Made by a program: the position numbers and the translations under genes. The notes below the pieces were generated by a model. It was given only the letters and a program-made list of their open reading frames with translations, made no database searches and was not told where the DNA came from. Below are positions 35,713 to 57,250 of a DNA stretch of 64,000 nt, one piece after another (position 1 is the first letter of the stretch; each line of letters opens with the position of its first letter). The DNA is taken from positions 1-64,000 of IMG/VR virus record IMGVR_UViG_3300028558_000791; one strand, given 5' to 3'.

Positions 35713-35787
35713 GCGCAACTCGACGACATCGGCATGTTTCGTTTCAATTTGTTGGGACTATTTCCCAAATATGGAAGGTGTATTATT

Positions 35788-37419
35788 ATGTCAAACAAGA
35801 ACTTATTCTCAAACAAGAACAAGCTAACGGTATCTGTTTCTAAGAAGGTAACTCTGCCAACCAACACGGTTAATGAGGCAGGTGGAACTGCATATAAGCT
35901 GTCCGACAAGGCTGCTTTGGCGCAGTACGCCATGACTGGTACGTTCAACGGTACATACTATGCATCCGATGCAGATCAACTTAAGAAGGTCCTTGAGTTG
36001 GCAAACAAGGTAGATCCAAAGTTCGTCGCTAAGCTGGCAGTGTACGCACGCCAGAGAGGCTTGATGAAGGATATGCCTGCCGTTCTTGCAGCCGTCATTG
36101 CTGGAAGAGACGCTGACCTATTGGCTACGATTTTCGATAGAGTAATCGACAATCCAAAGATGCTTCGTAACTTCGTTCAGATCATCCGATCTGGCGCAAC
36201 TGGCCGTAAGTCCTTGGGAACTCGCCCAAAGAAGTTGGTACAGAAGTATCTTGAGAACTTGACCGACGAGCAGTTGTTCAAGGCTGATGTTGGTAACGAT
36301 CCGTCGTTGCAGGACATCATCAAGTTGGTTCACCCAAAGCCAACTAACAAGCAGCGTTCTGCGTTGTACGGTTACTTGCTCGACAAGGAGTACAACAAGA
36401 GAGACCTCGTGTCTTTGGCACAACAGTTCGAAGCATTCAAGAAGGATATGAAGGGAGAGATCCCAGATGTTCCGTTCCAGATGTTGACGGCTCTGCCATT
36501 GACTGATACGCACTGGAAGCAGATTGCTGAGAATGCAACCTGGAACCAGATCCGTATGAACCTCAATACGTTTGCTCGTCACAACGTATTGGCTGACAAG
36601 AAGCTGGTCGATGTTTTGGCAGCAAAGCTATCGGACCCAGAGCAGGTCAAGCGTTCCAAGACGTTCCCATATCAGTTGTTCACCACTTACTTGAACGTGG
36701 ACGCCACGATTCCAAGCAAGCTGACGAACGCATTGCAAGATGCGGCTGATTCTTCTTTGGATAACATTCCTGAGTTCCCAGGAAAGGTCTTCGTAATGGT
36801 TGACACTTCTGGTTCTATGGGCTCTGCCGTCACCGGTAAGAGAGTAAATCCAAAGACTGGTAAGGAGGAATCCTTTACGACTAAGGCTCGATGCGTAGAC
36901 GTGGCAGCACTTTTCGCAGCAGCAATCTTGCGCAAGAATCCAGACACTGAGATTGTGCCATTCGACACCTCAGTACATGTTGGTCACCGATTCAATCCAC
37001 GTGATTCGATCATGACCAATGCAAAGACTCTAGCTTCATTCGGTGGTGGTGGTACCAACTGCTCCGCTGCTTTGGAGTATGTCAACAAAAAGGCTGGCAA
37101 GGGCGACCTTGTCATCTACGTGTCTGACAATGAGTCATGGGTTGATACGAAGGCATCTAACTCAGGTGTGTTCGGATACTACCGCCGTAATGGCACTGCC
37201 ACTATGGAAGAGTGGAATAAGTTCGCAGCCCGTAACAAGGGTGCAAAGCTTGTCTGTATCGACATTCAACCAAACTCCTCCACCCAAGCACACGACAGGG
37301 ATGACATCCTGAACGTGGGAGGATTCAGTGACCAGGTGTTCGATGTAATCGCAAGATTCGCCGAGCTTGGAAACAACAAGGATCTCTGGATCAAGACGAT
37401 CGAAGACGTCAAACTCTAA
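35788..37419 (+). CDS. rsr: Ro60 / TROVE domain RNA-binding protein (Rsr) with vWA domain
   Basis: NEAGGTAY, TGTFNGTYY, LVHPKP, RMNLNTFARH, MIDAS VDTSGSM, GGGTNCS, VSDNESW. Confidence 0.93.
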   Translation: MSNKNLFSNKNKLTVSVSKKVTLPTNTVNEAGGTAYKLSDKAALAQYAMTGTFNGTYYASDADQLKKVLELANKVDPKFVAKLAVYARQRGLMKDMPAVLAAVIAGRDADLLATIFDRVIDNPKMLRNFVQIIRSGATGRKSLGTRPKKLVQKYLENLTDEQLFKADVGNDPSLQDIIKLVHPKPTNKQRSALYGYLLDKEYNKRDLVSLAQQFEAFKKDMKGEIPDVPFQMLTALPLTDTHWKQIAENATWNQIRMNLNTFARHNVLADKKLVDVLAAKLSDPEQVKRSKTFPYQLFTTYLNVDATIPSKLTNALQDAADSSLDNIPEFPGKVFVMVDTSGSMGSAVTGKRVNPKTGKEESFTTKARCVDVAALFAAAILRKNPDTEIVPFDTSVHVGHRFNPRDSIMTNAKTLASFGGGGTNCSAALEYVNKKAGKGDLVIYVSDNESWVDTKASNSGVFGYYRRNGTATMEEWNKFAARNKGAKLVCIDIQPNSSTQAHDRDDILNVGGFSDQVFDVIARFAELGNNKDLWIKTIEDVKL

Positions 37420-37427
37420 TCGTCAGA

Positions 37428-37492
37428 GCCTCTAACCGAAGGGTGCCCGAGTGAAGACCGGGTTGCTGATGCAAGTTCAGCATGGAGGCCCA
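37428..37492 (+). ncRNA. Compact tRNA-like RNA directly after Ro60
   Basis: GCCTCTA/TGGAGGC plus CCA; GCTGA-TGCAAGT-TCAGC T-like arm; CCCG/CGGG arm. Confidence 0.55.
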
Positions 37493-40806: not shown

Positions 40807-40807
40807 A

Positions 40808-41416
40808 ATGACTAAAGCATTATATGTTGGTAGTTTCGACCCTATCACCAACGGTCATATTGATATTATGAAGCGTAGCTTACAGTTCTGTAAGCAACTG
40901 GTGATTGGGATAGGTATCAATCCTAACAAGACTACTATGTTTGATGAGCGGGAGAGGAACTCCATGATTTTTCAAACGATAGTGAAGGAGTTTGACTTCC
41001 TTCATTCAACCAATACTTCGGTTGCTTCTTTTCAGGGACTTACAGTAGAGTATGCTAAAGAAATTGGTGCAACGATTCTAATTCGCGGAATTAGATCCGT
41101 TTCTGATTTCGAATATGAAATTAATTTGGCCAACATCAACAAGGTTCTGGCCCCATCAATTGAAACAATTTTCCTGCCCACCAGTCCTGATCTGGCGGTT
41201 GTCTCCTCTTCAATGGTAAAAGAAATTGCAAAGTTGAACGGAGATATTTCAAGATTCGTACCCAGCTATATTGCCGAGAGGATTCATTCAAAATTCGGTT
41301 TCTTCAAGCATGGCAAGACAGAGATTGGCACTGATACTATCAATAGATTACGAGAAGCTACAGTAGCTATTGAGAAAGAATTGGGAATCAAACCAAAAGA
41401 TGAGGGCGAAAAATAA
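40808..41416 (+). CDS. coaD: Phosphopantetheine adenylyltransferase
   Basis: GSFDPITNGH, IRGIRSVSDFEYE, VSSSMVKEIA. Confidence 0.92.
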   Translation: MTKALYVGSFDPITNGHIDIMKRSLQFCKQLVIGIGINPNKTTMFDERERNSMIFQTIVKEFDFLHSTNTSVASFQGLTVEYAKEIGATILIRGIRSVSDFEYEINLANINKVLAPSIETIFLPTSPDLAVVSSSMVKEIAKLNGDISRFVPSYIAERIHSKFGFFKHGKTEIGTDTINRLREATVAIEKELGIKPKDEGEK

Positions 41417-41430: not shown

Positions 41431-41458
41431 TTGACGAGCTAATTTTTAAGACTACAAT
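41431..41458 (+). promoter_or_regulatory. sigma70-like promoter of the RNA cluster
   Basis: TTGACG-N16-TACAAT. Confidence 0.55.
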
Positions 41459-41561: not shown

Positions 41562-41644
41562 GGGGGAGTAGCTCAGCGAAAGAGCGCAAGGATACCGTAA
41601 GGAAAACCTTGAGGTCCCTGGTTCAATTCCAGGCTCCCCCACCA
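41562..41644 (+). ncRNA. tRNA-like RNA with 15-nt anticodon loop
   Basis: Intact acceptor, D and T arms plus ACCA; CAAGG-ATACCGTAAGGAAAA-CCTTG. Confidence 0.85.
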
Positions 41645-41708: not shown

Positions 41709-41784
41709 GGGACTGTAGCTCAGTGTTAGAGCGTCGGATTAAAAACCCGAAGGTCGCAGGTTCAACTCCTCGCCAGTCCCACCA
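41709..41784 (+). tRNA. Atypical tRNA, anticodon AAA (Phe)
   Basis: GGGACTG/CAGTCCC plus ACCA; loop TTAAAAA; bulged T stem. Confidence 0.7.
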
Positions 41785-42084: not shown

Positions 42085-42159
42085 GCCTCTGTAGCTCAAG
42101 AAACAGAGCGTCGTCCGTTGAGGACGATGATGTAGGTGTAAAGCCTACTGGAGGCTCCA
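42085..42159 (+). tRNA. Atypical tRNA (loop CG-TTG-AG, T-loop TGTAAAG)
   Basis: All four stems pair; G33; T-CCA end. Confidence 0.7.
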
Positions 42160-42168
42160 TGTTACTAT

Positions 42169-42245
42169 GCCACTACTAGCTCAATTGGTTAGAGCACTGG
42201 ATTGTGGATCCGGGGGTTTCGGTTCGATTCCGAAGTTTGGTACCA
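42169..42245 (+). tRNA. tRNA-His(GTG)-like, imperfect acceptor
   Basis: CTGGA-TTGTGGA-TCCGG; lacks C73. Confidence 0.75.
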
Positions 42246-42353
42246 TGACGAATGTCCGAGTAGGATTACATTTTTATGCAAAAAAACCGATGGGGTTCGA
42301 TTCCCCTTTAGGGCTGGCGCCAGGCAAAACATCTTATTCATTTCTTGTCGTCA
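42246..42353 (+). ncRNA. Y RNA-like 1 (T-arm cargo)
   Basis: TGACGA-ATG..GAGTAGGAT-TACA / ATCTTATTC..TTG-TCGTCA; internal GGGG-TTCGATT-CCCC. Confidence 0.8.
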
Positions 42354-42355
42354 AT

Positions 42356-42432
42356 CAGAGAATGTTGTTTAATGGTTAGCATCCGTGCCCTGGAAGCATG
42401 TGGTCCCGGTTCGAATCCGGGTTCTCTGACCA
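42356..42432 (+). tRNA. tRNA-Pro(TGG), atypical loop
   Basis: CAGAGAA/TTCTCTG plus ACCA; CGTGC-CCTGGAA-GCATG. Confidence 0.75.
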
Positions 42433-42503
42433 ATGCCAGTATATCTGGAAACTAATGAAGAACATTATTGGTAGTTCTGTTCTCGATGAAGTTTCTTGCT
42501 GGT

Positions 42504-42619
42504 CATACCGAATGAGCTTTAAGAGCTACTCAGTCTTAATAAATAAGTGCATGGGATAGCTACCTTAAAAATAACCGTTATAGTTAAGGCTCATAAGGAA
42601 ACACAATTTTGTCGGTATG
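42504..42619 (+). ncRNA. Y RNA-like 2 (divergent)
   Basis: CATACCGA-ATG / TTTTG-TCGGTATG; second helix GAGCTTTAA/TTAAGGCTC; lacks GGATTACA. Confidence 0.6.
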
Positions 42620-42623
42620 TTTT

Positions 42624-42724
42624 TGGGATACATTAAGTTGGTAATCATTACGATTCTGGTTCGAGTGGTAGGAACACAAATCGGAAACGTAAGTGAGAAG
42701 GTTCGAATCCTTCTGTCCTGACCA
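42624..42724 (+). ncRNA. tRNA-like RNA with long replaced anticodon arm
   Basis: TGGGATA/TGTCCTG plus ACCA; GAAGG-TTCGAAT-CCTTC; arm TTAC-GATT..AATC..GTAA. Confidence 0.7.
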
Positions 42725-42727
42725 AAT

Positions 42728-42801
42728 GACTTTGTGGACAAATTATTAAGTCACTCCCGTTAGAGGGAGAGATGTAAGTGCAAGGCTTGCCAAGGTCACC
42801 A
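42728..42801 (+). ncRNA. tRNA-like RNA with 6-nt anticodon loop (GTTAGA)
   Basis: GACTTTG/CAAGGTC plus ACCA; CTCCC/GGGAG; T-loop TGCAAGG. Confidence 0.7.
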
Positions 42802-42802
42802 T

Positions 42803-43019
42803 GTAACAAATGCCCCGAGAGGATTACATTCATTAGGAGAACGAGGTCGTGGGTCCGAGTCCCACCACTGCTACCATCCCAAAGCACGTCATTAAATTGA
42901 AGGGACACTCGAAAGAGTGATGTTGCCTGACTTACTTAGCGAAAGCTATCTAAGTCCTCATAGCAGTGTAGCTCAGTTGGCAGAGCGCGAAAAACATCTT
43001 TTCAAATTTTTGTTGTTAC
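42803..43019 (+). ncRNA. Y RNA-like 3 containing a circularly permuted tRNA with internal CCA
   Basis: GTAACAA-ATG..GAGAGGAT-TACA / ATCTTTTC..TTG-TTGTTAC; T arm plus CACTGCT-A-CCA precedes AGCAGTG plus D arm. Confidence 0.85.
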
Positions 43020-43022
43020 TAT

Positions 43023-43056
43023 CTCCGCTGTAGGGTCAAACCTAAAGCGGGGACCA
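43023..43056 (+). ncRNA. Minihelix: 12-position hairpin plus A-CCA
   Basis: CTCCGCTGTAGG-GTCAAA-CCTAAAGCGGGG-A-CCA. Confidence 0.6.
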
Positions 43057-43348
43057 AAAGACCAATCGTATCGGTCTTTATGAGAGAGATACATTCCTCT
43101 CAAAAGCATCTAGTGGTCGTCCGTTATCACTGGAGCTAAATAGTTAGCGGGCAGTATTCAGGGTTTGCTCCAGCCGAATTATGAATACTATTATTGAGAT
43201 TAAATTTGTTGGGGGCGTATTCGGTTGCGCTTGATATTCCGAAACTCTAATGGGAGTGAATATAGTTCCATTGTAACACTCAGCTATAACGATTAAGTAA
43301 CTCAGAGTGTTGCGCTTTACTAGCAATAACAATGCATAGTATATGTAT

Positions 43349-43422
43349 TCCGAGGTCGTTCAACGGTAGGACGGGTCGCTGTTAACGACTCTATATTGGT
43401 TCGATTCCAGTCCTCGGAGCCA
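43349..43422 (+). tRNA. tRNA-Asn(GTT)
   Basis: Canonical; G73-CCA. Confidence 0.95.
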
Positions 43423-43428
43423 GAATAT

Positions 43429-43515
43429 TCTGTGGTAGCCTAATGGTAAGGCAGGTGGCTGTTAACCACCCGGTGGTAAAACACTTTCTAGGTTCGAGTC
43501 CTAGCTGCAGAGCCA
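43429..43515 (+). tRNA. tRNA-Asn(GTT) with long variable arm
   Basis: GGTGG-CTGTTAA-CCACC; V-arm GGTG-GTAAAA-CACT. Confidence 0.85.
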
Positions 43516-43624
43516 AATAATACGGGGATTGATTAGACCGAAATGATCCGTATTAGCTGTTATGTTTGGTCAATTCTGCATAACGACAGAAGCTATGTCC
43601 AGTAAAATGGAGTCGTCTTCTGAA

Positions 43625-43880
43625 GATGAATGCCGATAAGGATTACACTAATACAACCGAGCCTCACGCCGTAGAATGCCCGCAAGGATTTCATTCCACA
43701 AATACCGGGTGGCTCACATCTCCCACTACATTACAAGAGATGATGAAAATTAAACTGAGATGTCTGACAAGCCTGCCTACCAGTTAGAGTAACAGGCTCA
43801 GTGGTGTAACTGATAATACACTGTGATTACTTGTTTACTTGTAAACAAAATAATTGCTATCTTTATCAACTTTAGTCATC
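43625..43880 (+). ncRNA. Y RNA-like 4 (large unknown cargo)
   Basis: GATGA-ATG..GATAAGGAT-TACA / ATCTTTATC..TAG-TCATC. Confidence 0.7.
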
Positions 43881-43887
43881 AAAATAT

Positions 43888-43962
43888 TCTGCTCTAGTGT
43901 AATTAGCACGGCGATCTCTTTGTAGGTCGAGGGTCATGGTTTAAGTCCATGGGGCGGAGCCA
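43888..43962 (+). ncRNA. tRNA-like RNA (Gln-like T1-A72, G73) with irregular anticodon arm
   Basis: TCTGCTC/GGGCGGA plus GCCA; CGATCT-CTTTGT-AGGTCG. Confidence 0.65.
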
Positions 43963-43982
43963 AAGCAAATCATGAGAAAGCA

Positions 43983-44411
43983 ATGTTTACTTCAACCGGA
44001 ATCCTTCAATATGATCCTGGTCAGGGTCTAAAACATTTCGATCCATGGTGGGCTCTTCTAGCCTGTGACGATGAAGTATCTAGGTATTATGCCTGGTTAC
44101 TAAAGAGACACGGAGTAGAAGTCTACCCTAACGATAAAGGGTTGTGGGGAACACACGTTTCAGTTTTGAAAGGTGCCGTCCCTCCCAATCAAGATAAGTG
44201 GGGCAAGTATCAAGACTTCGAAGTAGAAATCCATCTCAATCATCTTGTCCGTTATGATAACGGGAAACATGCTTGGGTAGATGTATACTCAGAAGATTTA
44301 TCAGCAATCCGACAGGAGTTAGGCTTCGATGCCAAGCCCTGGTACCATCTGACAATTGGTAGGTTGGTGAGACCATTTGATGTGGACTTTACCAAATATG
44401 GCATAACCTGA
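43983..44411 (+). CDS. 2H phosphoesterase family protein
   Basis: Two HxS/T motifs (THVSV, YHLTI) about 65 aa apart. Confidence 0.7.
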   Translation: MFTSTGILQYDPGQGLKHFDPWWALLACDDEVSRYYAWLLKRHGVEVYPNDKGLWGTHVSVLKGAVPPNQDKWGKYQDFEVEIHLNHLVRYDNGKHAWVDVYSEDLSAIRQELGFDAKPWYHLTIGRLVRPFDVDFTKYGIT

Positions 44412-44427
44412 TATATAATCAGCACAT

Positions 44428-44502
44428 ACCCTCGTACGCATCGGGTGAGGCGGGAAGCTTGTCAAGCTTTTGAGGGCGGTTCGAGTCCGCTCGGGGGTGC
44501 CA
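44428..44502 (+). tRNA. tRNA-Asp(GTC)
   Basis: GAAGC-TTGTCAA-GCTTT; G73-CCA. Confidence 0.85.
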
Positions 44503-44569
44503 AAGTCAAATGCCTTGATAGGATTACATTTTACCAAAAGAAAACATCTTATCTACTTTTTGTTGACTT
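44503..44569 (+). ncRNA. Y RNA-like 5 (minimal, stem only)
   Basis: AAGTCAA-ATG..GATAGGAT-TACA / AAAC-ATCTTATC..TTG-TTGACTT. Confidence 0.8.
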
Positions 44570-44572
44570 TTT

Positions 44573-44666
44573 CGATCACGCGTAGCTGGTTGCTCGGGCG
44601 AGACTTATAATCTTGCAAGGACTGATATTCCGTAACGGCAGGGTTCGATTCCCTGGTGATCGACCA
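44573..44666 (+). tRNA. Atypical tRNA-Ile(TAT), 6-bp anticodon stem, long variable region
   Basis: CGATCAC/GTGATCG plus ACCA; GCGAGA-CTTATAA-TCTTGC. Confidence 0.75.
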
Positions 44667-44669
44667 TAT

Positions 44670-44746
44670 GGCACTGTAGCCCAAAGGCAGGAGGCACCTG
44701 ACTTAAAATCAGTTCAGTGTGGGTTCAAATCCCACCAGTGCTACCA
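44670..44746 (+). tRNA. tRNA-Leu(TAA) with short variable loop
   Basis: CTGA-CTTAAAA-TCAG; no type II arm. Confidence 0.85.
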
Positions 44747-44765
44747 ATAAAGATATAGTTAATAT

Positions 44766-44841
44766 GGAACTTGAGCAAGTATGGTTATTGCATCGGTCTG
44801 AAAAGCCGACAAACGGGGTTCGATCCCCCGAGGTTCCACCA
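44766..44841 (+). tRNA. tRNA-Phe(GAA)
   Basis: TCGGT-CTGAAAA-GCCGA; ACCA. Confidence 0.9.
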
Positions 44842-44842
44842 A

Positions 44843-45193
44843 ATGAGAATTGTTCAAAAGCCTTGGGGCCATGAAGAAATCTGGGCAGAAACTCCCAACT
44901 ATGTTGGAAAAGTTCTCTCAATCAATCCTGGTCACAGACTCTCAAGACAATATCATAATCTCAAAGAAGAAACATTCAGAGTTCTTTTTGGGACGTTGAC
45001 GCTAGAAATAGGTGAGGGTGACGATATAGTTACTCACGTATTAACGGCAGGTCAAACTTTTCACTGTCCTCCAAAGACAGTTCATAGAATGATTTGCCAA
45101 CGAGTTATCAACTATGCACCAGTAAATGTATTGGAAGTATCAACCAATCATTTAGATGATGTAGTAAGATTAGAAGACGATTATAAAAGATAA
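44843..45193 (+). CDS. Cupin domain protein (mannose-6-phosphate isomerase C-terminal-like)
   Basis: KPWG, LSRQYH..KEE, HR, DDVVRLEDDY. Confidence 0.85.
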   Translation: MRIVQKPWGHEEIWAETPNYVGKVLSINPGHRLSRQYHNLKEETFRVLFGTLTLEIGEGDDIVTHVLTAGQTFHCPPKTVHRMICQRVINYAPVNVLEVSTNHLDDVVRLEDDYKR

Positions 45194-45270
45194 CGTGCTA
45201 TAGCTCAGTTGGTTAGAGTGCCTCTCTGATAAGGAGGAAGTCCCAGGTTCGAATCCCGGTAGCACGACCA
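45194..45270 (+). tRNA. tRNA-Ile(GAT)
   Basis: Canonical cloverleaf. Confidence 0.92.
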
Positions 45271-45481
45271 GTAACGAATGCAGTTAGGATTACATCCATA
45301 ACGACCTTAAAGTAGTTGACAGAGCCGCGAGGCGCTGAATCGATGGCAACAAAACGATCACCAGGTAATGCTGAGGTCCATCAGACTCTTGAGTCGAAGT
45401 TGCGGGGCGAACGGGAAGTATCTCGAAAGAGACTTTCAATGTGCCGGTCACACCCAGTATCTTAGCAATTTTTGTCGTTAT
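45271..45481 (+). ncRNA. Y RNA-like 6 (large unknown cargo)
   Basis: GTAACGA-ATG..GTTAGGAT-TACA / ATCTTAGC..TTG-TCGTTAT. Confidence 0.78.
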
Positions 45482-45485
45482 ACAT

Positions 45486-45561
45486 GGGACGGTAGCTCAG
45501 TGGTTAGAGCGCAACGCTGATAACGTTGAAGTCGATGGTTCGATTCCATCTCGTCCTACCA
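45486..45561 (+). tRNA. tRNA-Ile(GAT)
   Basis: Canonical cloverleaf. Confidence 0.95.
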
Positions 45562-45697
45562 ATGGCAAGCCATTAAAGCCCTTCCTTCTATAATTAATTG
45601 ATAAAACAGGACTTTTGCTTTCTTGCCAGATGATATTACATTTATGGCCCCACGCTTTAGTGGGTCACCATAAATAATAAATGAAGGTCGCACCTTC

Positions 45698-45786
45698 AGC
45701 CTGCCCACATGGATGGAAACTGTGGCGTCACCTTGGTAAACCAAGTAGTAAAGTGACAAGCCTGCCCACATGGTTGGAAACTGTGG
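45698..45786 (+). repeat. 28-nt direct repeat x2 with 33-nt hairpin spacer
   Basis: AGCCTGCCCACATGGWTGGAAACTGTGG at 45698 and 45759. Confidence 0.85.
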
Positions 45787-45789
45787 AAA

Positions 45790-45866
45790 GAATCGTTTAG
45801 CTCAATGGTAGAGCGTGGTCACTAGTGACGACTAAGATGCGGGTTCGATTCCCGTAATGATTCCCA
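45790..45866 (+). ncRNA. His-like tRNA (G-1:C73) with 9-nt anticodon loop
   Basis: GAATCGTT/AATGATTC-CCA; TGGTC-ACTAGTGAC-GACTA. Confidence 0.75.
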
Positions 45867-45894
45867 AGGGGACAACATTGTTGCTCCCTCAATC

Positions 45895-46048
45895 GAGGCA
45901 AATGCACCGAAGGTTTACATTTGGAATAATCATATCGTCGTAAGACGGTCGCAGGTTCGAATCCTGCAACTTCCGAAAGGAAGTTTGGCTGAGTGGTCTA
46001 AAGCAATGATGCTGAAAAGCATGCTAACTTTCAAATTTTTGTTGCTTC
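45895..46048 (+). ncRNA. yrlA: Y RNA-like 7, classical YrlA architecture
   Basis: GAGGCAA-ATG / TTG-TTGCTTC; T arm GCAGG-TTCGAAT-CCTGC, acceptor AACTTCC-GAAA-GGAAGTT, then D arm. Confidence 0.85.
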
Positions 46049-46050
46049 AT

Positions 46051-46179
46051 CTCCCGCTAGTTTAAAACGAAACACTTGTTATAGAGGACGTATACTTAAT
46101 CTATGATGAGCAAGTAGTAGAGCAAAACACCTCCACGCTAAGGAGGAGATTGCGAGTGCAAGTCTCGCAAGGGAGACCA
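46051..46179 (+). ncRNA. tRNA-like RNA with ~50-nt hairpin inserted in the D loop
   Basis: CTCCC/GGGAG plus ACCA; CCTCC-ACGCTAA-GGAGG; GCGAG-TGCAAGT-CTCGC. Confidence 0.7.
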
Positions 46180-46184
46180 AGGGT

Positions 46185-46511
46185 ATGAACCAAGACAAGC
46201 CGACAATGAAGGACCTGAAAGAAGGTCCGCCATTACTTTGTCCTATCTGTGATAGACCAAACTACTTCCCTTCAGACCATCACATGGTTCCGAAGTCAAG
46301 AGGCGGCAAGTCTACTGAAACGATCTGTGAAGATTGCCACAAAGCAATCCATGCACACTTCACCAATAAAGAATTGGAAGAAACGTATCATACGCCAGAA
46401 GCTTTGTTAGCTCATGAAGGTTTTGCCAAACAGATTAAATTTCTATCGAAACAAGATCCCGGCGGCAGATCGAAAACTAAAAAGAATAAAGATCGTCTAA
46501 GACGAGAATAA
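46185..46511 (+). CDS. HNH endonuclease
   Basis: CPIC, DHHMVPKSRGG, CEDCHKAIH. Confidence 0.85.
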   Translation: MNQDKPTMKDLKEGPPLLCPICDRPNYFPSDHHMVPKSRGGKSTETICEDCHKAIHAHFTNKELEETYHTPEALLAHEGFAKQIKFLSKQDPGGRSKTKKNKDRLRRE

Positions 46512-46516
46512 ATTGT

Positions 46517-46595
46517 GGTGCTATCGTATTTGTGGCCTTCAAGACTGCCCGCTGAAAACGGGACAAAATGAGTTCGATTCTCATTGGCACCACCA
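46517..46595 (+). tRNA. tRNA-Phe(GAA), weak D arm
   Basis: CCCG-CTGAAAA-CGGG; GGTGCTA/TGGCACC plus ACCA. Confidence 0.8.
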
Positions 46596-46664
46596 GCTAA
46601 TCGCGTGATATATCCTGTGTAACCAAGCGTGAGCCCCCGAGGCCACGATCGAAAAGGCGGTAAT

Positions 46665-47276
46665 ATGGGACAAGTAATTCTAGCGAAATGCGTTGTAACA
46701 ACAGAAGAAGATTGGGTTCCAGTTGTATTAGAGGATGACCTCGAAACCTTAGCTGTACAGCAAGGTATTCTACAAGAGAATCAATCTAAAGCGCGAAGAC
46801 TAAACGATAGAGCAATCAATAAAGATCCCGAAGCTAGTCTTAGGAACACGATCTTTTCTAAGCGCTCTGAGTATGCAGTACATCAGTACTTCGATAAAGT
46901 TCCCCGAGTTACTTTACCCGGAGAGTTTCATGACTGGCCAGATGTTGGTCAGGCGAATGTTAGATTCATCGGTGATGCAGCCGATGGCTTAATGATACAA
47001 GATAGAGACCAGGGCGAACTGCCCATGATACTAACTACAACCAAGGACTTGACATTTCAAGACCGAACGATATGGTTAATCGGTTGGGGTCTCACAGATC
47101 AATTACGACGTAATTTTTATCTAATCAACCAGTTCCGAGAGAATAAGAATTGGGGTAGAATGGGCGGAGACTTTGAGGACCATGAGCAATTCATTTATCC
47201 TCGCTCGATGCTGACTCCGATGAAATGGTTTAGCAAAGAAACCATGAACGTACCATATATCAATAAAAAGAAATAA
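46665..47276 (+). CDS. Hypothetical protein, related to 50396-50908 (possible PD-(D/E)xK-like fold)
   Basis: E-x-A..., DVG..VR..L....D pattern shared. Confidence 0.5.
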   Translation: MGQVILAKCVVTTEEDWVPVVLEDDLETLAVQQGILQENQSKARRLNDRAINKDPEASLRNTIFSKRSEYAVHQYFDKVPRVTLPGEFHDWPDVGQANVRFIGDAADGLMIQDRDQGELPMILTTTKDLTFQDRTIWLIGWGLTDQLRRNFYLINQFRENKNWGRMGGDFEDHEQFIYPRSMLTPMKWFSKETMNVPYINKKK

Positions 47277-47323
47277 TACTTAGTGGTGCAACCTCAGCCA
47301 CTCTAATTAGCGATGAGGTTCAT

Positions 47324-47398
47324 GGGGCTATGATGTTAATGGTAGCATAGTTGACTCTTAATCAATCCGTCTGAGTTCGATCCTCAGTGGCCCTACCA
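47324..47398 (+). tRNA. tRNA-Lys(CTT)
   Basis: GTTGA-CTCTTAA-TCAAT; ACCA. Confidence 0.92.
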
Positions 47399-47399
47399 A

Positions 47400-47654
47400 A
47401 TGAAAAGATGCAGTGTTTGCAAAAGAAGCGACGTAGAATTCGGCAAGAATAAGAATAAAAAAGATGGCCTACAAGTTCAATGTAAGATTTGTCAGGCACA
47501 AACTTCTGCAAAACATTATCTTTGTAATAAAGAAAAACAGTTAGAAAGAATTTACGAACGCCGTAATCAGTTAAGGCAATCAATCTTTGATTATTTCAAA
47601 GAGCATCCTTGTGTTGATTGTGGCGAGACTGATCCAATAGTTTTAGAGTATAAT
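47400..47654 (+). pseudogene. Truncated HNH endonuclease
   Basis: CSVC..CKIC..CVDCGETDPIVLE, then runs into a tRNA where the catalytic DH is expected. Confidence 0.6.
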
Positions 47655-47731
47655 GGGTCCATAGTGTTAGCGGAGAGCACCACGGTCTTTTAAACCGTCT
47701 AGGCTGGGTTCGAATCCCAGTGGACCTACCA
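47655..47731 (+). tRNA. tRNA-Lys(TTT)
   Basis: ACGGT-CTTTTAA-ACCGT; ACCA. Confidence 0.92.
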
Positions 47732-47734
47732 CAT

Positions 47735-47899
47735 ATGAGCAAGCTTATTGAGGGTGAGGACTTCTACTACGATGAAAGTGGTAAGATGGTTCTCACCCAA
47801 GCTTTTTTATTGAGGCGTGGTTACTGCTGTAACTACAGGTGCAAACATTGTCCGTATAAGAAGGTCCCCGATGGAAAAGATAAAGACCACGATAATTAA
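47735..47899 (+). CDS. DUF5522-like Cys-rich small protein (not in ORF track)
   Basis: Hand translation: EGEDFYY...LLRRGYCCNYRCKHCPY. Confidence 0.75.
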   Translation: MSKLIEGEDFYYDESGKMVLTQAFLLRRGYCCNYRCKHCPYKKVPDGKDKDHDN

Positions 47900-48428
47900 C
47901 CTGTACGGCGGGCCTGGTGCTGGTAAATCTACCTCAGCCGCTTATTTGTATTATCTATTGAAGTGTCAACAAGAAAATGTTGAACTTGTTCGTGAGTATG
48001 TCAAGAACTGGGCCTGGGAAGGTCGAGCGTTCAATGTCTACGATGAACTTTACTTCTTAGGTAAACAGGTTCGACATGAGAGTATGTTGTTCGGCAAAGT
48101 GAAATATATCGTGACTGATGCTCCCGTCTATATGACAGCTTATTATGCCGGCATCTATTGCAGTCAAGGTCTTGCGCAAGGCGTTGAGAAAGCTGCTACG
48201 GCGTTCTATCAGCAAGCCAAGGACGATGGCCACAATCACCTCCACGTCTATTTAAAGCGTCACAGGCCCTATCAGGCTGAGGGGCGTTACCAGTCCGAGA
48301 CTGAAGCGTTGTCCGTTGACTCTGGTGTCTTGGAAATGTTATCTAGACTAGATGTTCCAGTTCTTCATGCCTCACCTGAAGAGGAAGACATGAAGCGAGT
48401 GCTGGAGTTGATTCAGAAAGACGCATAA
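47871..48428 (+). CDS. P-loop ATPase/kinase (NadR/AAA_28-like)
   Basis: INLYGGPGAGKST, ELVREYVK..AWE, IVTD, GRYQ. Confidence 0.8.
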   Translation: MEKIKTTIINLYGGPGAGKSTSAAYLYYLLKCQQENVELVREYVKNWAWEGRAFNVYDELYFLGKQVRHESMLFGKVKYIVTDAPVYMTAYYAGIYCSQGLAQGVEKAATAFYQQAKDDGHNHLHVYLKRHRPYQAEGRYQSETEALSVDSGVLEMLSRLDVPVLHASPEEEDMKRVLELIQKDA

Positions 48429-48429
48429 C

Positions 48430-48843
48430 ATGATTGAAACATTCAAAGACCTTGTGGGTGATGACGCAAAGACGCCCGAAGATATCGATGCAAAACTCAA
48501 AGAGAAGCTTGGTATCGGACTAGATGCAATGGCTGGTGCCCTATGTGACTCTCTCAAGAATAAAGCGGAAGAGGTTGCCGAAGATTGTTTTAGTATTGCT
48601 CCCTACGGAGACTATTCTAAAATGATTGAAGACAAAGCAGAGATGGTTAAGTTCCTCCGAGAGGAGGCGTCTAAGCCAGAACATTGGAAGCTAGACTTCT
48701 TGGAAGTCAAGAAGAAGGAAGATAAACTAATCGAGTTCATCTTCGTAAATTCATCCGTTGATGATGGAGACATTCTCAAAGGATTCGTCTTCGTTGGATT
48801 CAGCGGCATTATCCGTCATGCCTTCGCCCAAATTCACACATGA
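48430..48843 (+). CDS. Hypothetical protein
   Basis: Packed ORF. Confidence 0.55.
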   Translation: MIETFKDLVGDDAKTPEDIDAKLKEKLGIGLDAMAGALCDSLKNKAEEVAEDCFSIAPYGDYSKMIEDKAEMVKFLREEASKPEHWKLDFLEVKKKEDKLIEFIFVNSSVDDGDILKGFVFVGFSGIIRHAFAQIHT

Positions 48844-49070
48844 AAATAATTCTATTATGTTTATGCCTCGTTGGTTGTAACGAGGAATCTAGAGAGGGTT
48901 TTAGGAAAGAAGTTTTCCCAACTGTTCATGAAGAGGCCCAGCGCATTACCTATGTGAAGGATACGAGAACAAATCTATGCTTCGTAAGGAATTCAGTACT
49001 TACGGATGTCAATAGTGTTGTTTTCACCAATGTTCCTTGTACGCCAGAGGTAGAGAAATTGATTAGATGA
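48840..49070 (+). CDS. Small lipoprotein
   Basis: LVGC lipobox. Confidence 0.6.
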   Translation: MKIILLCLCLVGCNEESREGFRKEVFPTVHEEAQRITYVKDTRTNLCFVRNSVLTDVNSVVFTNVPCTPEVEKLIR

Positions 49071-49082
49071 ATTGGAGAATGT

Positions 49083-49172
49083 ATGATTTTATTGGGTGTT
49101 TCCGCACTAGTCCTTACAGGATTTGCATTCTCTTTGACCTTTGAGTTTGTTTACAAGCTAGTCATTAAATGA
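49083..49172 (+). CDS. 29-aa hydrophobic peptide
   Basis: GGAGA RBS; single TM. Confidence 0.45.
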   Translation: MILLGVSALVLTGFAFSLTFEFVYKLVIK

Positions 49173-49212
49173 CATCTAAGGGTAAGTTTCAATTTTAACC
49201 TGGAGACATATT

Positions 49213-49314
49213 ATGCTTTCTACTTTGACTTTCGTTATGGTAGCATGCTTGTTTGCAGACTTCTGCTACGAAAAAGGTGGCATGTTGGTTGCACTCGTAA
49301 AGAGCAAGCTCTAA
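49213..49314 (+). CDS. 33-aa hydrophobic peptide
   Basis: GGAGA RBS; hydrophobic N-terminus. Confidence 0.45.
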   Translation: MLSTLTFVMVACLFADFCYEKGGMLVALVKSKL

Positions 49315-49419
49315 TTAACTCAATAGAAAGCGCTCTTGATTGGGCACTTTCTATCTAAACTAAAAAAAATATCAGGGTTGACACCTGGCAATAAAGCGTT
49401 ATATTATGTGACAGGTTAT

Positions 49420-49495
49420 GGGGCATTAGCTCATCTGGGAGAGCGTCTGCTTTGCACGCAGAAGGCGATCGGTTCAAGTCCGATATGCTCCACCA
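49420..49495 (+). tRNA. tRNA-Ala(TGC)
   Basis: Canonical, G3-U70; TTGACA promoter at 49378. Confidence 0.95.
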
Positions 49496-49639
49496 TAACT
49501 GACTGGTCAAGTACGAAACAGAATTCAATTCGCGAATGTTTCAATAGTTACTTGAACCAGCCTCAGTAAAATTTTGAGTCTCACCCAAGAGATTCTACAA
49601 GTCCTGGACATGACTTGGATTCGGAAACTGTCCGGTAAT

Positions 49640-49713
49640 GGGAACATGGTGTAATATAAACACGAGGCCGTAACTGGCTTAGTTCCAGGTGAAACTCCTG
49701 GTGTCATCCACCA
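49640..49713 (+). ncRNA. tRNA-like RNA with 6-nt anticodon loop
   Basis: AGGCC-GTAACT-GGCTT; CCAGG-TGAAACT-CCTGG; ACCA end. Confidence 0.65.
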
Positions 49714-50072: not shown

Positions 50073-50149
50073 GGGTCTTTTGATGTAAAGGCTGGCCTCT
50101 AGACTTTAGTGCTAGAGGACATCGGGTTCGACTCCCGAATGATCCGCCA
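50073..50149 (+). ncRNA. tRNA-like RNA, no D stem, loop CT-TTA-GT
   Basis: GGGTC/GATCC plus GCCA; CCTCTAG/CTAGAGG; TCGGG-TTCGACT-CCCGA. Confidence 0.65.
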
Positions 50150-50271: not shown

Positions 50272-50374
50272 GCTTCGCAATTCGAAATAATCTCTGCTGG
50301 CTGTCTTCCGCGGCTGCAAACAAAGAATACTGGCACGGACAGAGAACATGGTGAAATTCCATGGCGAAGCACCA
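50272..50374 (+). ncRNA. tRNA-like RNA with tmRNA-TLD-like layout
   Basis: GCTTCGC/GCGAAGC plus ACCA; CTCTG/CAGAG enclosing about 43 nt; CATGG-TGAAATT-CCATG. Confidence 0.7.
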
Positions 50375-50395
50375 TTAGTTGTTATAGGTAGCTCA

Positions 50396-50908
50396 ATGAA
50401 TCACGATCCGATTACAGTTAAGCTAACCGCCATTGAAAAAAGAGTTGCCATTCTAGTTGGAGATACTAGAACATCAGTATCTAAAGATGATGATGATCGT
50501 CCTGATGCTCATGGTTTAGAGGCTACCAGAGAAGAGGGTCAGAAGATCGATAGACAGGGAGCTACTGCGGAATCAGCTTTCGCCAAGCATCTCAATGTAT
50601 ATTGGTGTGGCTCTGTCAATACTTTCAAGAGCGAGAAGGATGTAGGATCTGTTTTTGAAGTAAGATCCATCGATTCTTTCAAAAAGTCCTTGATTGTTAG
50701 GGCTGATGATGCAGATGATGCGTATTTCGTTTGTGTTGCAGTTCTTGATGATGCCTGTTATATTATGGGCTACCTTCTTGGTAAAGACGCTAAGAAGGGC
50801 AAGTGGTTACGAGATGTCAATGGCCGAGAGCCATCCTTCTTTGTCCCCGTAGATTTTTTGAGAGATCCGCGAGAACTGAAAGATTTGTACTTAAAGATAA
50901 AGAAATAA
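50396..50908 (+). CDS. Hypothetical phage protein (possible PD-(D/E)xK-like fold)
   Basis: GATAESAFAK, DVG..FEVRS; start moved past the RNA gene. Confidence 0.55.
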   Translation: MNHDPITVKLTAIEKRVAILVGDTRTSVSKDDDDRPDAHGLEATREEGQKIDRQGATAESAFAKHLNVYWCGSVNTFKSEKDVGSVFEVRSIDSFKKSLIVRADDADDAYFVCVAVLDDACYIMGYLLGKDAKKGKWLRDVNGREPSFFVPVDFLRDPRELKDLYLKIKK

Positions 50909-56566: not shown

Positions 56567-56898
56567 ACATGAGCTTAGCTTGGTCAAAGGATATGGAATT
56601 GGATCCTGGTACGTTTGGAGGTTCTCCGGCATGCCATGTTTTAGTAGATATGATGAATCACAATGTTATTCCTATTATAGAGAAGCATCGTGTTTTATCA
56701 TTCATCAATGATGCTATCTATCAATTCAAGTGGTTATCCACTGTGAAGGAGTATGGCGTCAAGGAGAGGTCTATGGTTCTGATGAGGGACGATATTCTAT
56801 CTAGGGTGGATCATATGCCATATCCTGCCAAGTTTAATTCACATCTGAAGAACGTGATAACTCACCACTTCAGACGATACTTGAAAGAAGAGACCTAG
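56563..56898 (+). CDS. Hypothetical protein
   Basis: Packed ORF. Confidence 0.5.
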   Translation: MNMSLAWSKDMELDPGTFGGSPACHVLVDMMNHNVIPIIEKHRVLSFINDAIYQFKWLSTVKEYGVKERSMVLMRDDILSRVDHMPYPAKFNSHLKNVITHHFRRYLKEET

Positions 56899-57250
56899 AC
56901 AATCGCTCCCGTAAGGAGAGGAAAGTCGGAGCTACGTAGGGCAATTTGCTGGCTAACGGCCAGGCGCAGTGATGCGACAGATAGTGCAACAGAAAAGAAA
57001 CCGCCATGAATCCGCCAGGCCCGAAAGGGAGCAACGGTAGATGGTAAGGGTGAAATGGTGGGGTAAGAGCCCACCGCACCTATAGTGATATAGGTGGCAA
57101 GGTAAACCTCAGATGTAGCAAGCTAAATAGAGAGTGACTTGTCCGGTCAATACTCTCGGGTTAGTGCTGGAGCCATTAGGTAACTAACGGCCAAGATTAA
57201 TGATTGTCTCGATTTATAGACAGGACTCCGCTTATAGGGTGTCTTCTTTC
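56883..57250 (+). ncRNA. rnpB: RNase P RNA, bacterial type A
   Basis: GAGGAAAGTCGGAG, AGTGCAACAGAAA, GGGTGAAA..GGTAAGAG, GGTAAACC, ACAGGACTCCGCTTA; P1 GAAAGAAGA/TCTTCTTTC. Confidence 0.93.

What the first reader, a model, noticed from the sequence alone, without database searches (positions are those of the whole stretch)
42085..49713. Family of tRNA-like RNAs with TG(C/T/A)AA T-loops and defective anticodon loops
Seen: 42085 (TGTAAAG; G33), 42728 (TGCAAGG; 6-nt loop), 46051 (TGCAAGT; C33) and 49640 (TGAAACT; 6-nt loop), plus 37428 and 50272, all replace T-psi-C with TG(C/T/A) and lack a normal U33 7-nt loop, while keeping stems and CCA. The correlation suggests a distinct non-translational class rather than random decay (inference).
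Basis: partly seen in the sequence, partly recalled or inferred. Interest (0 to 1): 0.6.

Follow-up and report, generated by a model that had tools for sequence, protein, structure and literature searches.

The report
Non-decoding tRNA look-alikes in a giant phage
A 480-kb soil phage and its relatives carry a conserved family of tRNA-shaped RNA genes that keep the acceptor arm and CCA end but lack what a tRNA needs on the ribosome, so they are selected tRNA mimics of unknown role, not decaying tRNA genes.

Summary
Five of the six named elements (37428, 42085, 42728, 46051, 50272) are well-folded tRNA-like RNAs with a U-G-N-A-A T-loop, an encoded CCA and no usable anticodon loop. The sixth (49640) is a weak, probably degenerate member. 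They lie in the + strand tRNA arrays of a 480,838-bp soil or rhizosphere phage that also encodes Ro60, an RNase P RNA and many Y-RNA-like RNAs.

The same class recurs in at least eight related phage contigs. In six orthologue groups, 25 of 36 variable base pairs changed on both sides and 7 on one side while staying paired. The "anticodon" loops vary from 3 to 8 nt, even between orthologues.

Three other features go with the T-loop:
- The D-loop has no G18G19.
- The 51-63 pair is never G-C (0 of 12, against 96 of 147 ordinary tRNAs).
- U8, A14, A15 and U48 are invariant in the seed alignment.

Apart from the invariant core, this matches the non-proteogenic tRNA-Gly of staphylococci, which work off the ribosome.

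"Selected, non-translational class, not decay" is therefore supported. What the RNAs do is not shown. My best guess is that they act in trans as CCA-ended tRNA mimics (decoys or cofactors). Rival readings are processing punctuation, aminoacyl carriers and Ro60 partners.

The parts
37428..37492 (+). Element A: 65-nt compact tRNA-like RNA, T-loop UGCAAGU, CCA without an unpaired discriminator. It starts 8 nt after the Ro60 stop codon and ends 2 nt before the next ATG.
   Evidence: z -3.9. The orthologue L011 11593-11659, in the same position after rsr, has 7 pairs changed on both sides and an identical T-loop.
42085..42159 (+). Element B: 75-nt cloverleaf, T-loop UGUAAAG, D-loop AAGAAACA (no GG), 5-nt (or G33 7-nt) 'anticodon' loop, UCCA end.
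   Evidence: z -4.7; class model 68.5 bits. Orthologues L132 3745-3818, L154 and L156 carry compensatory changes in the acceptor and 'anticodon' stems; the loop is GTTGA in three variants and ATGA in the fourth.
42728..42801 (+). Element C: 74-nt cloverleaf, T-loop UGCAAGG, D-loop AAAUUAUUAA, 6-nt loop, ACCA end. A Y-RNA-like unit follows 3 nt downstream.
   Evidence: tRNA-???; 66.1 bits; z -2.5. No orthologue was found, and soil relatives lack this stretch.
46051..46179 (+). Element D: 129-nt tRNA-like RNA with a large extra arm, T-loop UGCAAGU, loop ACGCUAA. It follows a Y-RNA-like unit by 4 nt and precedes the HNH ORF by 5 nt.
   Evidence: z -2.7. In orthologues L058 6322-6451 and L130 2465-2594 the T stem is GCGAG/CTCGC in one and GCAAG/CTTGC in the other, and the 'anticodon' loop is 7, 4 or 5 nt.
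49640..49713 (+). Element E: doubtful or degenerate member. T-loop UGAAACU, with U8, G10, A14, A15 and U48 present, but an imperfect acceptor stem.
   Evidence: Class model 29.8 bits. The fold is not significant (z -0.7) and there is no orthologue. Its T arm resembles the one inside a Y-like unit of L118.
50272..50374 (+). Element F: 103-nt acceptor/T-arm RNA with one long internal arm, T-loop UGAAAUU, ACCA end. It overlaps the first listed ATG of ORF 50348-50908.
   Evidence: z -2.85. In orthologue L130 8385-8483, 4 acceptor pairs and 1 T-stem pair changed on both sides. Different ORFs follow the two copies.
41431..41458 (+). Best sigma-70-like promoter match ahead of the array that holds B, C and D (context).
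   Evidence: 10 of 12 positions. There is no strong + strand terminator-like site inside the array. This is a consensus match only.
35734..37419 (+). Ro60/Rsr orthologue (TROVE + Ro60 vWA domains), directly upstream of element A (context).
   Evidence: The best cultured relative is Myxococcus phage Mx1, at 51.8% identity.
56887..57250 (+). Phage-borne bacterial class A RNase P RNA, the likely 5'-end processing ribozyme for the array (context).
   Evidence: 272.5 bits, full length. It is also present in relatives G001, G002 and G003, and absent from the complete records G006 and G008.

Best explanation
These are genes for a clade-specific family of tRNA-derived RNAs that do not decode.

Shown:
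- They sit in the tRNA arrays on the tRNA strand.
- They fold as cloverleaves or reduced cloverleaves, and each has an encoded CCA.
- Their acceptor, D, T and 'anticodon' stems are kept by compensatory change.
- In the seed alignment, U8, G10, A14, A15, U48 and U54-G55-N-A57-A58 are invariant and G53 and C61 nearly so. This keeps the residues of the L-shaped core and of the U54.A58 T-loop closure.
- They lack a 7-nt U33 anticodon loop, G18G19/U55-C56, and G-C at T-stem pair 51-63.

Inferred:
- They are transcribed with the tRNAs and cut out like them: RNase P at a mostly U(-1) junction, possibly by the phage's own RNase P RNA, then 3' trimming to CCA.
- They are invisible to aminoacyl-tRNA synthetases that read anticodons, to EF-Tu and to the ribosome.
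- They act in trans, off the ribosome, through their shape and free CCA end.
- Most likely they are mimics (decoys or cofactors) for proteins that bind or attack the acceptor end of tRNA during infection. Candidates are host tRNA-directed defence enzymes, or the phage's own RNA-surveillance set.
- Like every gene in these arrays, they also mark processing sites for their neighbours.
For: Real, selected RNA genes:
- Fold z-scores are -2.5 to -4.7 for A, B, C, D and F.
- Orthologue groups have 25 double and 7 single compensatory changes, against 4 breaks.
- Class-wide covariation is 0.849 against 0.281 in shuffles, reached in 0 of 500 shuffles.
- The class recurs in L010, L011, L118, L128, L130, L132, L058 and L143 and in metagenome contigs.

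Not decoders:
- Loops are 3-8 nt and change between orthologues.
- Rfam's tRNA model gives no hit at E <= 10.

Kept off the ribosome:
- GG occurs in the D region in 2 of 12 class members against 135 of 147 ordinary tRNAs (p = 1.7e-8).
- G-C at pair 51-63 occurs in 0 of 12 against 96 of 147 (p = 7.5e-6).
- The S. aureus non-proteogenic tRNA-Gly carry the same kind of signature and are excluded from translation.
- The elbow pair G19-C56 is read by the ribosome's A-site finger, L5 and L1.

Made like tRNAs:
- Same strand, tRNA-like spacing, and U(-1) in 15 of 18.
- A promoter-like site lies ahead of the array.
- RNase P RNA is present in this phage and in three relatives that carry the class.

Trans-acting rather than only cis-acting:
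- B, L11_1 and L11_3 sit between ordinary tRNAs.
- B is conserved in different contexts.

Conflict-type neighbourhood:
- Ro60, a 2H-phosphoesterase-like protein, PARG, NUDIX and cytidylyltransferase-like genes lie nearby.
Against: - There is no expression data: no RNA run holds this phage. Ends, abundance and charging status are all unknown.
- No partner protein is identified.
- The decoy idea has no direct support.
- Acceptor stems and discriminators are diverse. This argues against one specific synthetase, but it would also fit a purely structural cis role.
- Several members abut ORF starts or Y-like units, as punctuation would predict.
- C is absent from close relatives, and so is A, so single members are dispensable.
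- The statistics count related sequences as independent.
Confidence: 0.5

Rival explanations
1. Cis-acting punctuation only. The elements are translation-inert RNase P and 3'-end processing handles. Their job is to define the ends of neighbouring Y-like RNAs and (near-)leaderless mRNAs in long polycistronic transcripts, and the released RNA has no function of its own.
For: - A lies exactly between the Ro60 stop codon and the next ATG. In closer relatives that lack A, terminator-like hairpins occupy that place.
- D, its L130 orthologue and L128_3 end 0-5 nt before an ATG. C, L10_0, L10_1, L11_2, L118_1, L128_2, L154 and L156 abut Y-like units.
- A bare acceptor/T minihelix with CCA at 43022-43056 follows a Y-like unit.
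- The class co-occurs with the phage RNase P RNA.
Against: - Ordinary tRNAs in the same arrays do the same job, for example at 44841/44846 and 47398/47400.
- B, L11_1 and L11_3 lie between tRNAs, where no extra mark is needed.
- The D arm and the invariant U8, A14, A15, U48, G55 and A57 go beyond what a minihelix substrate of RNase P needs.
Confidence: 0.22
2. Aminoacyl carriers for a reaction off the ribosome, as the staphylococcal non-proteogenic tRNA-Gly are for Fem transferases.
For: The elements share the signature of those tRNAs: no G18G19, no U55, weak EF-Tu T-stem pairs and a shortened anticodon loop. One member (L010 16526) has the D-loop run CUUUUA, which is also reported for NP1/NP2. 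A weak EF-Tu stem only matters for a charged RNA.
Against: - No anticodon is conserved, there is no G3:U70, and acceptor stems and discriminators are diverse. No single synthetase identity is visible.
- The 480-kb genome has no FemAB or Acetyltransf_6 family gene.
Confidence: 0.12
3. Partners of the phage Ro60 protein: a second kind of Y RNA, or the detachable tRNA-like module of one.
For: - A lies directly after rsr in two phages.
- About half of the members abut Y-like units.
- Every assessable record with the class has rsr.
- M. smegmatis YrlA is cut by RNase P and receives CCA.
Against: - The class is absent near rsr in Mx1, Gordonia Sixama, Streptomyces Blueeyedbeauty, Thermus phiLo and LR745206.
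- It is absent from the complete Ro60+ and Y-unit+ record G008.
- A is missing after rsr in the two closest relatives.
- The elements have no long 5'/3' stem of the kind that carries the Ro60 site in Y RNAs.
Confidence: 0.1
4. Decaying tRNA pseudogenes, or chance hairpins.
For: E has a poor acceptor stem and an insignificant fold. C and A are missing from close relatives. The arrays are full of rearrangements.
Against: - Compensatory changes outnumber breaks 32 to 4.
- The same T-loop pentamer is kept although the acceptor stems are completely different.
- Such elements occur nowhere else in the 480 kb.
Confidence: 0.03
5. Real decoders with unusual loops, such as frameshift or stop suppressors.
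For: Some loops have 8 nt (L010 17430, L011 17501), as in frameshift suppressors. The arrays also hold a tRNA with a UUA anticodon.
Against: Loop length and sequence are not conserved between orthologues. Loops of 3-5 nt cannot present an anticodon. The elbow and the EF-Tu determinants are missing.
Confidence: 0.03

Closest known systems
Non-proteogenic tRNA-Gly (NP1-NP3) of Staphylococcus aureus and S. epidermidis
   Same: Both are full cloverleaves with a CCA end that lack G18G19 and U55. Both lack the strong EF-Tu T-stem pairs and have an anticodon loop shortened by an extra pair. The staphylococcal RNAs are encoded among ordinary tRNA genes and work off the ribosome (PMC13443448, PMC4574755, PMC12256121).
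   Different: The staphylococcal RNAs keep a UCC anticodon and glycine identity, are charged by GlyRS and feed FemXAB. The phage RNAs have no conserved anticodon or acceptor identity, and the phage has no Fem-like gene. Whether they are charged is unknown.
Bacterial Y RNAs with a tRNA-like domain (YrlA, Rfam RF02553)
   Same: Both are tRNA mimics linked to Ro60. M. smegmatis YrlA is cleaved by RNase P and gains CCA (PMC4201824). Element A lies next to rsr, and many members abut Y-like units.
   Different: In YrlA the tRNA-like module is circularly permuted inside a long Ro60-binding stem, and it keeps canonical D- and T-loops. Here the 5' and 3' ends form an ordinary acceptor stem and the elbow residues are changed. 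There is no Rfam YrlA hit on these elements.
Canonical tRNA (Rfam RF00005) and tRNA pseudogenes
   Same: Both share the cloverleaf, a 7-bp acceptor, a 5-bp T stem, U8, A14, the 15-48 pair, U54.A58 and CCA.
   Different: The phage elements have no 7-nt U33 loop, no G18G19 and no U55-C56, and they fall below the Rfam threshold or are not hit at all. Unlike pseudogenes, their stems are maintained by compensation.
Stable RNAs C and D of the phage T4 tRNA gene cluster (from my own knowledge, not checked here)
   Same: They are small stable RNAs of unknown function, encoded in a phage tRNA cluster and processed with the tRNAs.
   Different: I did not compare sequences or structures, and no relationship is claimed.
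Metazoan mitochondrial tRNAs without a canonical elbow
   Same: The G18G19/U55-C56 interaction is lost, and the D-loops are A/U-rich (PMC4810234).
   Different: Those tRNAs still decode on a co-evolved ribosome. Here ordinary tRNAs with canonical elbows sit beside the variant class in the same array.

Membership tests
Decoding tRNA (Rfam RF00005) | Scores at or above the family's gathering threshold (29 bits) | tested here: not met
   There is no hit for A, B, C, E or F at E <= 10, and only 22.3 bits for part of D. ARAGORN calls only C, as 'tRNA-???'.
Decoding tRNA (Rfam RF00005) | 7-nt anticodon loop with U33, conserved among orthologues | tested here: not met
   Loops are 3-8 nt. D has 7, 4 and 5 nt and B has 5 and 4 nt among orthologues.
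Decoding tRNA (Rfam RF00005) | Elbow residues G18, G19, U55 and C56 | tested here: not met
   Position 55 is G throughout, and position 56 is A, C or U. GG occurs in the D region in 2 of 12 members against 135 of 147 ordinary tRNAs.
Decoding tRNA (Rfam RF00005) | Cloverleaf with 7-bp acceptor, 5-bp T stem and NCCA end | tested here: met
   The exceptions are E (imperfect acceptor), A (tiny D arm) and F (one long arm).
Non-proteogenic tRNA (staphylococcal tRNA-Gly type) | Lacks G18G19 and U55, has weak EF-Tu T-stem pairs and a shortened anticodon loop | tested here: met
   (0 of 12 with G-C at pair 51-63).
Non-proteogenic tRNA (staphylococcal tRNA-Gly type) | Keeps a synthetase identity set and is aminoacylated | tested here: not met
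   At sequence level there is no conserved anticodon, no G3:U70, and first pairs and discriminators vary. Charging itself cannot be tested with these tools.
Non-proteogenic tRNA (staphylococcal tRNA-Gly type) | A dependent aminoacyl-tRNA transferase is present | tested here: not met
   The phage genome has no FemAB (PF02388) or Acetyltransf_6 (PF13480) match. The host is unknown, and other transferase families were not searched.
Y RNA (YrlA/YrlB) | Long stem made by the 5' and 3' ends that carries the Ro60 site; Rfam score | tested here: not met
   The ends form an acceptor stem with a free CCA. No YrlA or YrlB hit falls on these elements.
Y RNA (YrlA/YrlB) | Encoded next to rsr and bound by Ro60 | tested here: inconclusive
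   Only A lies next to rsr. It is absent there in G001 and G002 and in unrelated Ro60 phages. Binding is not testable here.
tRNA pseudogene | Uncompensated decay of stems in homologues | tested here: not met
   There are 32 compensated changes against 4 broken pairs, and 93.7% of cells are paired.
T-loop structural motif | Pentaloop closed by a reverse-Hoogsteen U1.A5 pair, with a purine at position 4 | tested here: inconclusive
   The sequence fits: U54 and A58 are invariant and A57 is a purine (motif as described). The fold itself cannot be tested here.

The most novel reading that the evidence does not exclude
The UGNAA class is a new kind of phage counter-defence RNA. On this reading, the RNAs are abundant, translation-inert tRNA decoys. 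Their acceptor arm and free CCA end soak up host enzymes that attack or modify tRNA 3' ends or acceptor arms. The changed elbow, weak EF-Tu stem and dead anticodon loop keep them from disturbing the phage's own translation.
Probability: 0.15. Interest if true: 0.85.

Novelty: new variant of a known kind. Interest (0 to 1): 0.64.

Why it matters
Phage tRNA genes are usually read as codon-usage helpers or as replacements for host tRNAs cut by defence nucleases. Here a clade of soil jumbo phages maintains several tRNA-shaped RNAs per genome, under clear purifying selection, that cannot decode. They carry the same exclusion-from-translation signature as the only well-studied off-ribosome tRNAs, the staphylococcal tRNA-Gly used for cell-wall synthesis.

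This gives a sequence-defined, testable family of viral tRNA mimics. It also supplies a covariance model to find more of them, since tRNA finders miss them or flag them as undetermined. The family sits in an unusual RNA toolkit: Ro60, about 30 Y-RNA-like units across the relatives, and a phage-borne RNase P RNA. Finding the partner would show what a virus gains from a tRNA body without an anticodon.

Tried and rejected
1. Near and distant DNA searches of GenBank phages with the array and with D found no match.
2. I looked for a 19-56 pair that covaries between D-loop and T-loop by eye on the aligned members. None was consistent, so I claim no replacement elbow pair.
3. I considered reading the T-loop as a GNRA tetraloop closed by a 54-59 pair. 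Position 59 is not complementary in half of the members, and it changes from A to C between B orthologues.
4. The Ro60-partner idea did not hold up. The class is absent around rsr in five unrelated Ro60 phages and in the complete Ro60+ record G008, and A is absent after rsr in G001 and G002.
5. The Fem-type carrier idea has no matching transferase family in the genome.
6. D is not tied to the HNH gene as a mobile cassette: the HNH gene is absent after the L058 orthologue. F is followed by different ORFs in its two copies.
7. For enrichment of the class at flanks of Y-like units, the automatic count was too strict (4 flanks). My hand count (about 10 of 33 assignable flanks, against 13% of all elements) is only suggestive.
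8. No RNA sequencing run holds this phage. Laying DNA contigs showed only that the arrays are polymorphic.
9. E does not align with the Y-like units of L118 and L011 beyond the T arm.
11. MFE-based calling of anticodon loops in ordinary tRNAs proved unreliable, so I did not use those counts as statistics.

Full report
WHAT THE WINDOW IS

The window is the first 64 kb of a 480,838-bp virus record. Near-identical DNA is found in rhizosphere and soil metagenomes, and no RNA run holds it.

ARAGORN finds 29 tRNA genes in the window, all on the + strand, and Rfam finds 26. Rfam also finds a full-length bacterial class A RNase P RNA at 56887-57250. The whole genome has 56 Rfam tRNA hits.

The ORF at 35734-37419 is a Ro60/Rsr orthologue with TROVE and Ro60 vWA domains. 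Its best cultured relative is the Ro60 of Myxococcus phage Mx1, at 51.8% identity. Neighbouring ORFs include:
- a deoxyribosyltransferase-like + NUDIX protein;
- a microbial PARG;
- a cytidylyltransferase-like protein;
- a 2H-phosphoesterase-like protein;
- HNH and GIY-YIG nucleases.

THE OBSERVATION

- B (42085-42159) and C (42728-42801) fold without constraints into full cloverleaves. Each has a 7-bp acceptor, a D arm, a third arm, a 5-bp T stem and NCCA (z = -4.7 and -2.5).
- A (37428-37492) is a 65-nt compact version with a 3-bp stand-in for the D arm (z = -3.9).
- D (46051-46179) carries a large extra arm (z = -2.7).
- F (50272-50374) is an acceptor/T-arm helix with one long internal arm (z = -2.85).
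- E (49640-49713) is weak. Its acceptor needs a bulge and a mismatch, and its fold is not better than shuffles (z = -0.7).

A genome-wide scan for "5-bp stem, 7-nt loop, 7-nt acceptor match, NCCA" found UGNAA loops only at A, B, C, D and F. All five lie on the + strand between 37.4 and 50.4 kb. Rfam's tRNA model does not report A, B, C, E or F even at E <= 10. ARAGORN reports only C, as "tRNA-???".

RELATIVES AND SELECTION

I fetched related phage contigs in four ways:
- through the Ro60 protein;
- through a conserved motif of the neighbouring Y-like RNAs;
- through the 2H-phosphoesterase-like protein;
- through a metagenome scan with B's T arm.

The same kind of element recurs in those contigs: L010 has 4-5, L011 has 5, L118 and L128 have several, and L130, L058, L132 and L143 also carry it.

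Orthologues show the pattern expected of a selected structure.
- A and its L011 counterpart both lie directly after the Ro60 stop codon. They differ at 7 base pairs on both sides, and their T-loops are identical.
- B has four variants. These carry compensatory changes in the acceptor (U4-A69 to G4-C69) and in the third stem, and the third loop is GTTGA in three variants and ATGA in the fourth.
- D's three orthologues have third-arm loops of 7, 4 and 5 nt.
- F's acceptor differs from its orthologue at four pairs, all compensated.

Summed over six orthologue groups there are 142 pairs: 106 invariant, 7 changed on one side, 25 changed on both sides and 4 broken. All 4 broken pairs lie in a poorly aligned arm of D.

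A covariance model built from ten members retrieves the class at 62-79 bits, well above ordinary tRNAs at 41 bits or less. On its 13-sequence alignment:
- 93.7% of cells are paired, against 66.2% in shuffles;
- 14 of 16 pairs change on both sides;
- the covariation score is 0.849 against 0.281, reached in 0 of 500 shuffles;
- slid controls give 32-51% paired.

One caveat applies: that alignment is fitted to the model.

THE CLASS SIGNATURE

Invariant in the seed alignment are U8, G10, A14, A15, the base just 5' of the T stem (U48), G53, U54, G55, A57, A58 and C61. This keeps the residues of the U8.A14 and 15.48 tertiary pairs, and of the U54.A58 pair that closes a T-loop motif as described in PMC4810234. 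The partners of the elbow are gone: there is no G18G19, position 55 is G and position 56 is A, C or U.

I compared a strict, non-redundant set (7/7 acceptor, 5/5 T stem, NCCA) from the genome and 16 related loci.

| Feature | UGNAA elements | UUCRA elements | Fisher p |
|---|---|---|---|
| GG in the D region | 2 of 12 | 135 of 147 | 1.7e-8 |
| G-C at T-stem pair 51-63 | 0 of 12 | 96 of 147 | 7.5e-6 |

These counts treat related sequences as independent, so the p values are indicative only.

Acceptor stems share no identity element. There is no G3:U70, the first pair is G-C, A-U, C-G or U-A, and the discriminator is A (10), G (6) or U (2). The base before +1 is U in 15 of 18.

The 43888-43962 family has D-loop UAAUUA, T-loop UUYAAGU or UUCGAGU, and loops of 5-8 nt in five orthologues.

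SURROUNDINGS

Between the tRNAs lies a second conserved RNA family. I counted 31 units in at least 12 contigs. Six are in the window, at 42247-42352, 42805-43017, 43625-43880, 44505-44567, 45273-45479 and 45897-46046.

Each unit has:
- a covarying 5-bp terminal stem (GACGA/TCGTC, AACAA/TTGTT, GTCAA/TTGAC, GATGA/TCATC and others);
- conserved AATGC, AGGATTACAT, ATCTT and TTTTTG blocks;
- an inner helix that beats shuffles in 31 of 31 units.

Several units enclose a circularly permuted tRNA-like module, which is the YrlA architecture described by Chen et al. (PMC4201824). Rfam gives only weak YrlA and YrlB hits.

Both ends of the units abut tRNA or tRNA-like genes, and several ORFs start 0-5 nt after a CCA. 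The arrays therefore look like punctuated polycistrons. The best sigma-70-like matches on the + strand lie ahead of the two array blocks.

The phage RNase P RNA is shared by relatives G001, G002 and G003, which carry the class. It is missing from the complete records G006 and G008, which do not carry it. That comparison is confounded by phylogeny.

WHAT IT MOST LIKELY IS AND HOW IT WORKS

It is shown that these are conserved, structured, tRNA-derived RNA genes that cannot present a conserved anticodon.

It is inferred that they are excised like tRNAs and kept away from EF-Tu and the ribosome. The inference rests on the parallel with the S. aureus non-proteogenic tRNA-Gly. [quoted passage not shown] It also rests on the role of the G19-C56 face in ribosomal recognition.

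What the RNAs then do is open. I favour a trans-acting mimic, either a decoy or a cofactor for proteins that bind the tRNA acceptor end or shape. Three points support this:
- Members sit among ordinary tRNAs, where no extra processing mark is needed.
- B is conserved in different contexts.
- More is conserved than an RNase P minihelix substrate requires.

The rival readings fare as follows.
- Pure punctuation fits the positions of A, D, F and the Y-flanking members. It does not explain the conserved core or the invariant G55.
- An aminoacyl-carrier role fits the staphylococcal signature. However, no identity set is visible, and the genome has no Fem-type transferase.
- A Ro60-partner role fits A's position. 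However, the class is absent near rsr in five unrelated Ro60 phages and in the complete Ro60+ record G008, and A is absent after rsr in the two closest relatives.
- Decay and unusual decoding are excluded, or nearly so, by the orthologue data.

NOVELTY AND LIMITS

I found no description of this class in the searched literature. Papers on jumbo phages mention only "tRNA-like sequences", pseudogenes, or a ROT/TROVE protein with a tRNA-like partner. A recent preprint on bacterial tRNA mimics concerns other families.

I file the class as a new variant of a known kind, an off-ribosome tRNA mimic.

The limits are:
- no expression, end-mapping, charging or binding data;
- an unknown host;
- single members (A, C) that are dispensable among close relatives;
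- all relatives come from one clade, so co-occurrence arguments are weak.

Noticed in passing
window 42247-42352, 42805-43017, 43625-43880, 44505-44567, 45273-45479, 45897-46046 (+); genome 76353-76472: A conserved Y-RNA-like family, with 31 units in at least 12 related phage contigs. Each unit has a covarying 5-bp terminal stem, conserved AATGC / AGGATTACAT / ATCTT / TTTTTG blocks, and an inner helix better than shuffles in 31 of 31 units. Rfam gives only weak YrlA and YrlB hits. The unit ends abut tRNA(-like) genes. This is probably a multi-copy Y RNA set for the phage Ro60.
   Followed up: partly
window 56887-57250 (+): A full-length bacterial class A RNase P RNA (272.5 bits) is carried by the phage. 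It is also present in relatives G001, G002 and G003, and absent from the complete related records G006 and G008. The huge-phage papers returned by my literature search did not mention a phage-borne RNase P RNA.
   Followed up: partly
window 42805-43017 (+): This Y-like unit holds a split or permuted tRNA-like module. A T arm, the 3' acceptor strand and ACCA come first. After about 85 nt come the matching 5' acceptor strand and a canonical D arm. It could be nicked by RNase P into a two-piece, CCA-ended RNA, as reported for M. smegmatis YrlA.
   Followed up: no
window 43022-43056 (+): A bare acceptor/T-arm minihelix with ACCA lies directly after a Y-like unit (z = -4.06). It occupies the same position as element D does after unit 45897-46046.
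   Followed up: partly
window 41562-41644, 43888-43962, 42624-42724, 46517-46595, 51779-51853, 63891-63961 (+): These are further tRNA-likes that do not decode or are otherwise odd, with near-canonical T-loops. The element at 41562 has a 15-nt third loop and orthologues in L011 and L128. The 43888 family has D-loop UAAUUA and third loops of 5-8 nt in five orthologues. The others have orthologues in L127 and L076.
   Followed up: partly
window 37495, 44846, 46185, 47400 (+): ORF start codons lie 2-5 nt after the CCA of the preceding tRNA or tRNA-like gene. After 44841 and 47398 there is no room for a Shine-Dalgarno sequence. This suggests tRNA-punctuated, (near-)leaderless mRNAs.
   Followed up: no
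window 50348-50908 (+): The first ATG of this ORF lies inside the conserved T arm of element F. The true start is probably further downstream, for example the ATG at 50398.
   Followed up: partly
window 34206-41416 and 43983-48428 (+): A cluster of conflict-type genes surrounds the Ro60 gene and the arrays. It includes a deoxyribosyltransferase-like + NUDIX protein, dCMP deaminase, microbial PARG, a GIY-YIG nuclease, a cytidylyltransferase-like protein, a 2H-phosphoesterase-like protein, a cupin, an HNH nuclease and an AAA_28 protein.
   Followed up: no
window 50073-50149, 41709-41784, 44573-44666 (+): ARAGORN reports three unusual tRNAs: one with anticodon UUA (read as a stop suppressor), a tRNA-Phe with anticodon AAA, and a 94-nt tRNA-Ile(UAU) with an insertion.
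   Followed up: no
window 42433-42798, 44512-44579, 45875-45897: Contigs of related strains in soil metagenomes skip these stretches, which hold element C plus the 42624 tRNA-like, the minimal Y-like unit, and a spacer. Single array members therefore come and go among close relatives.
   Followed up: no
genome 258639-259010 (-) and 229261-229659 (+), outside the window: The phage genome carries two PolyA_pol / CCA-adding-enzyme family genes.
   Followed up: no
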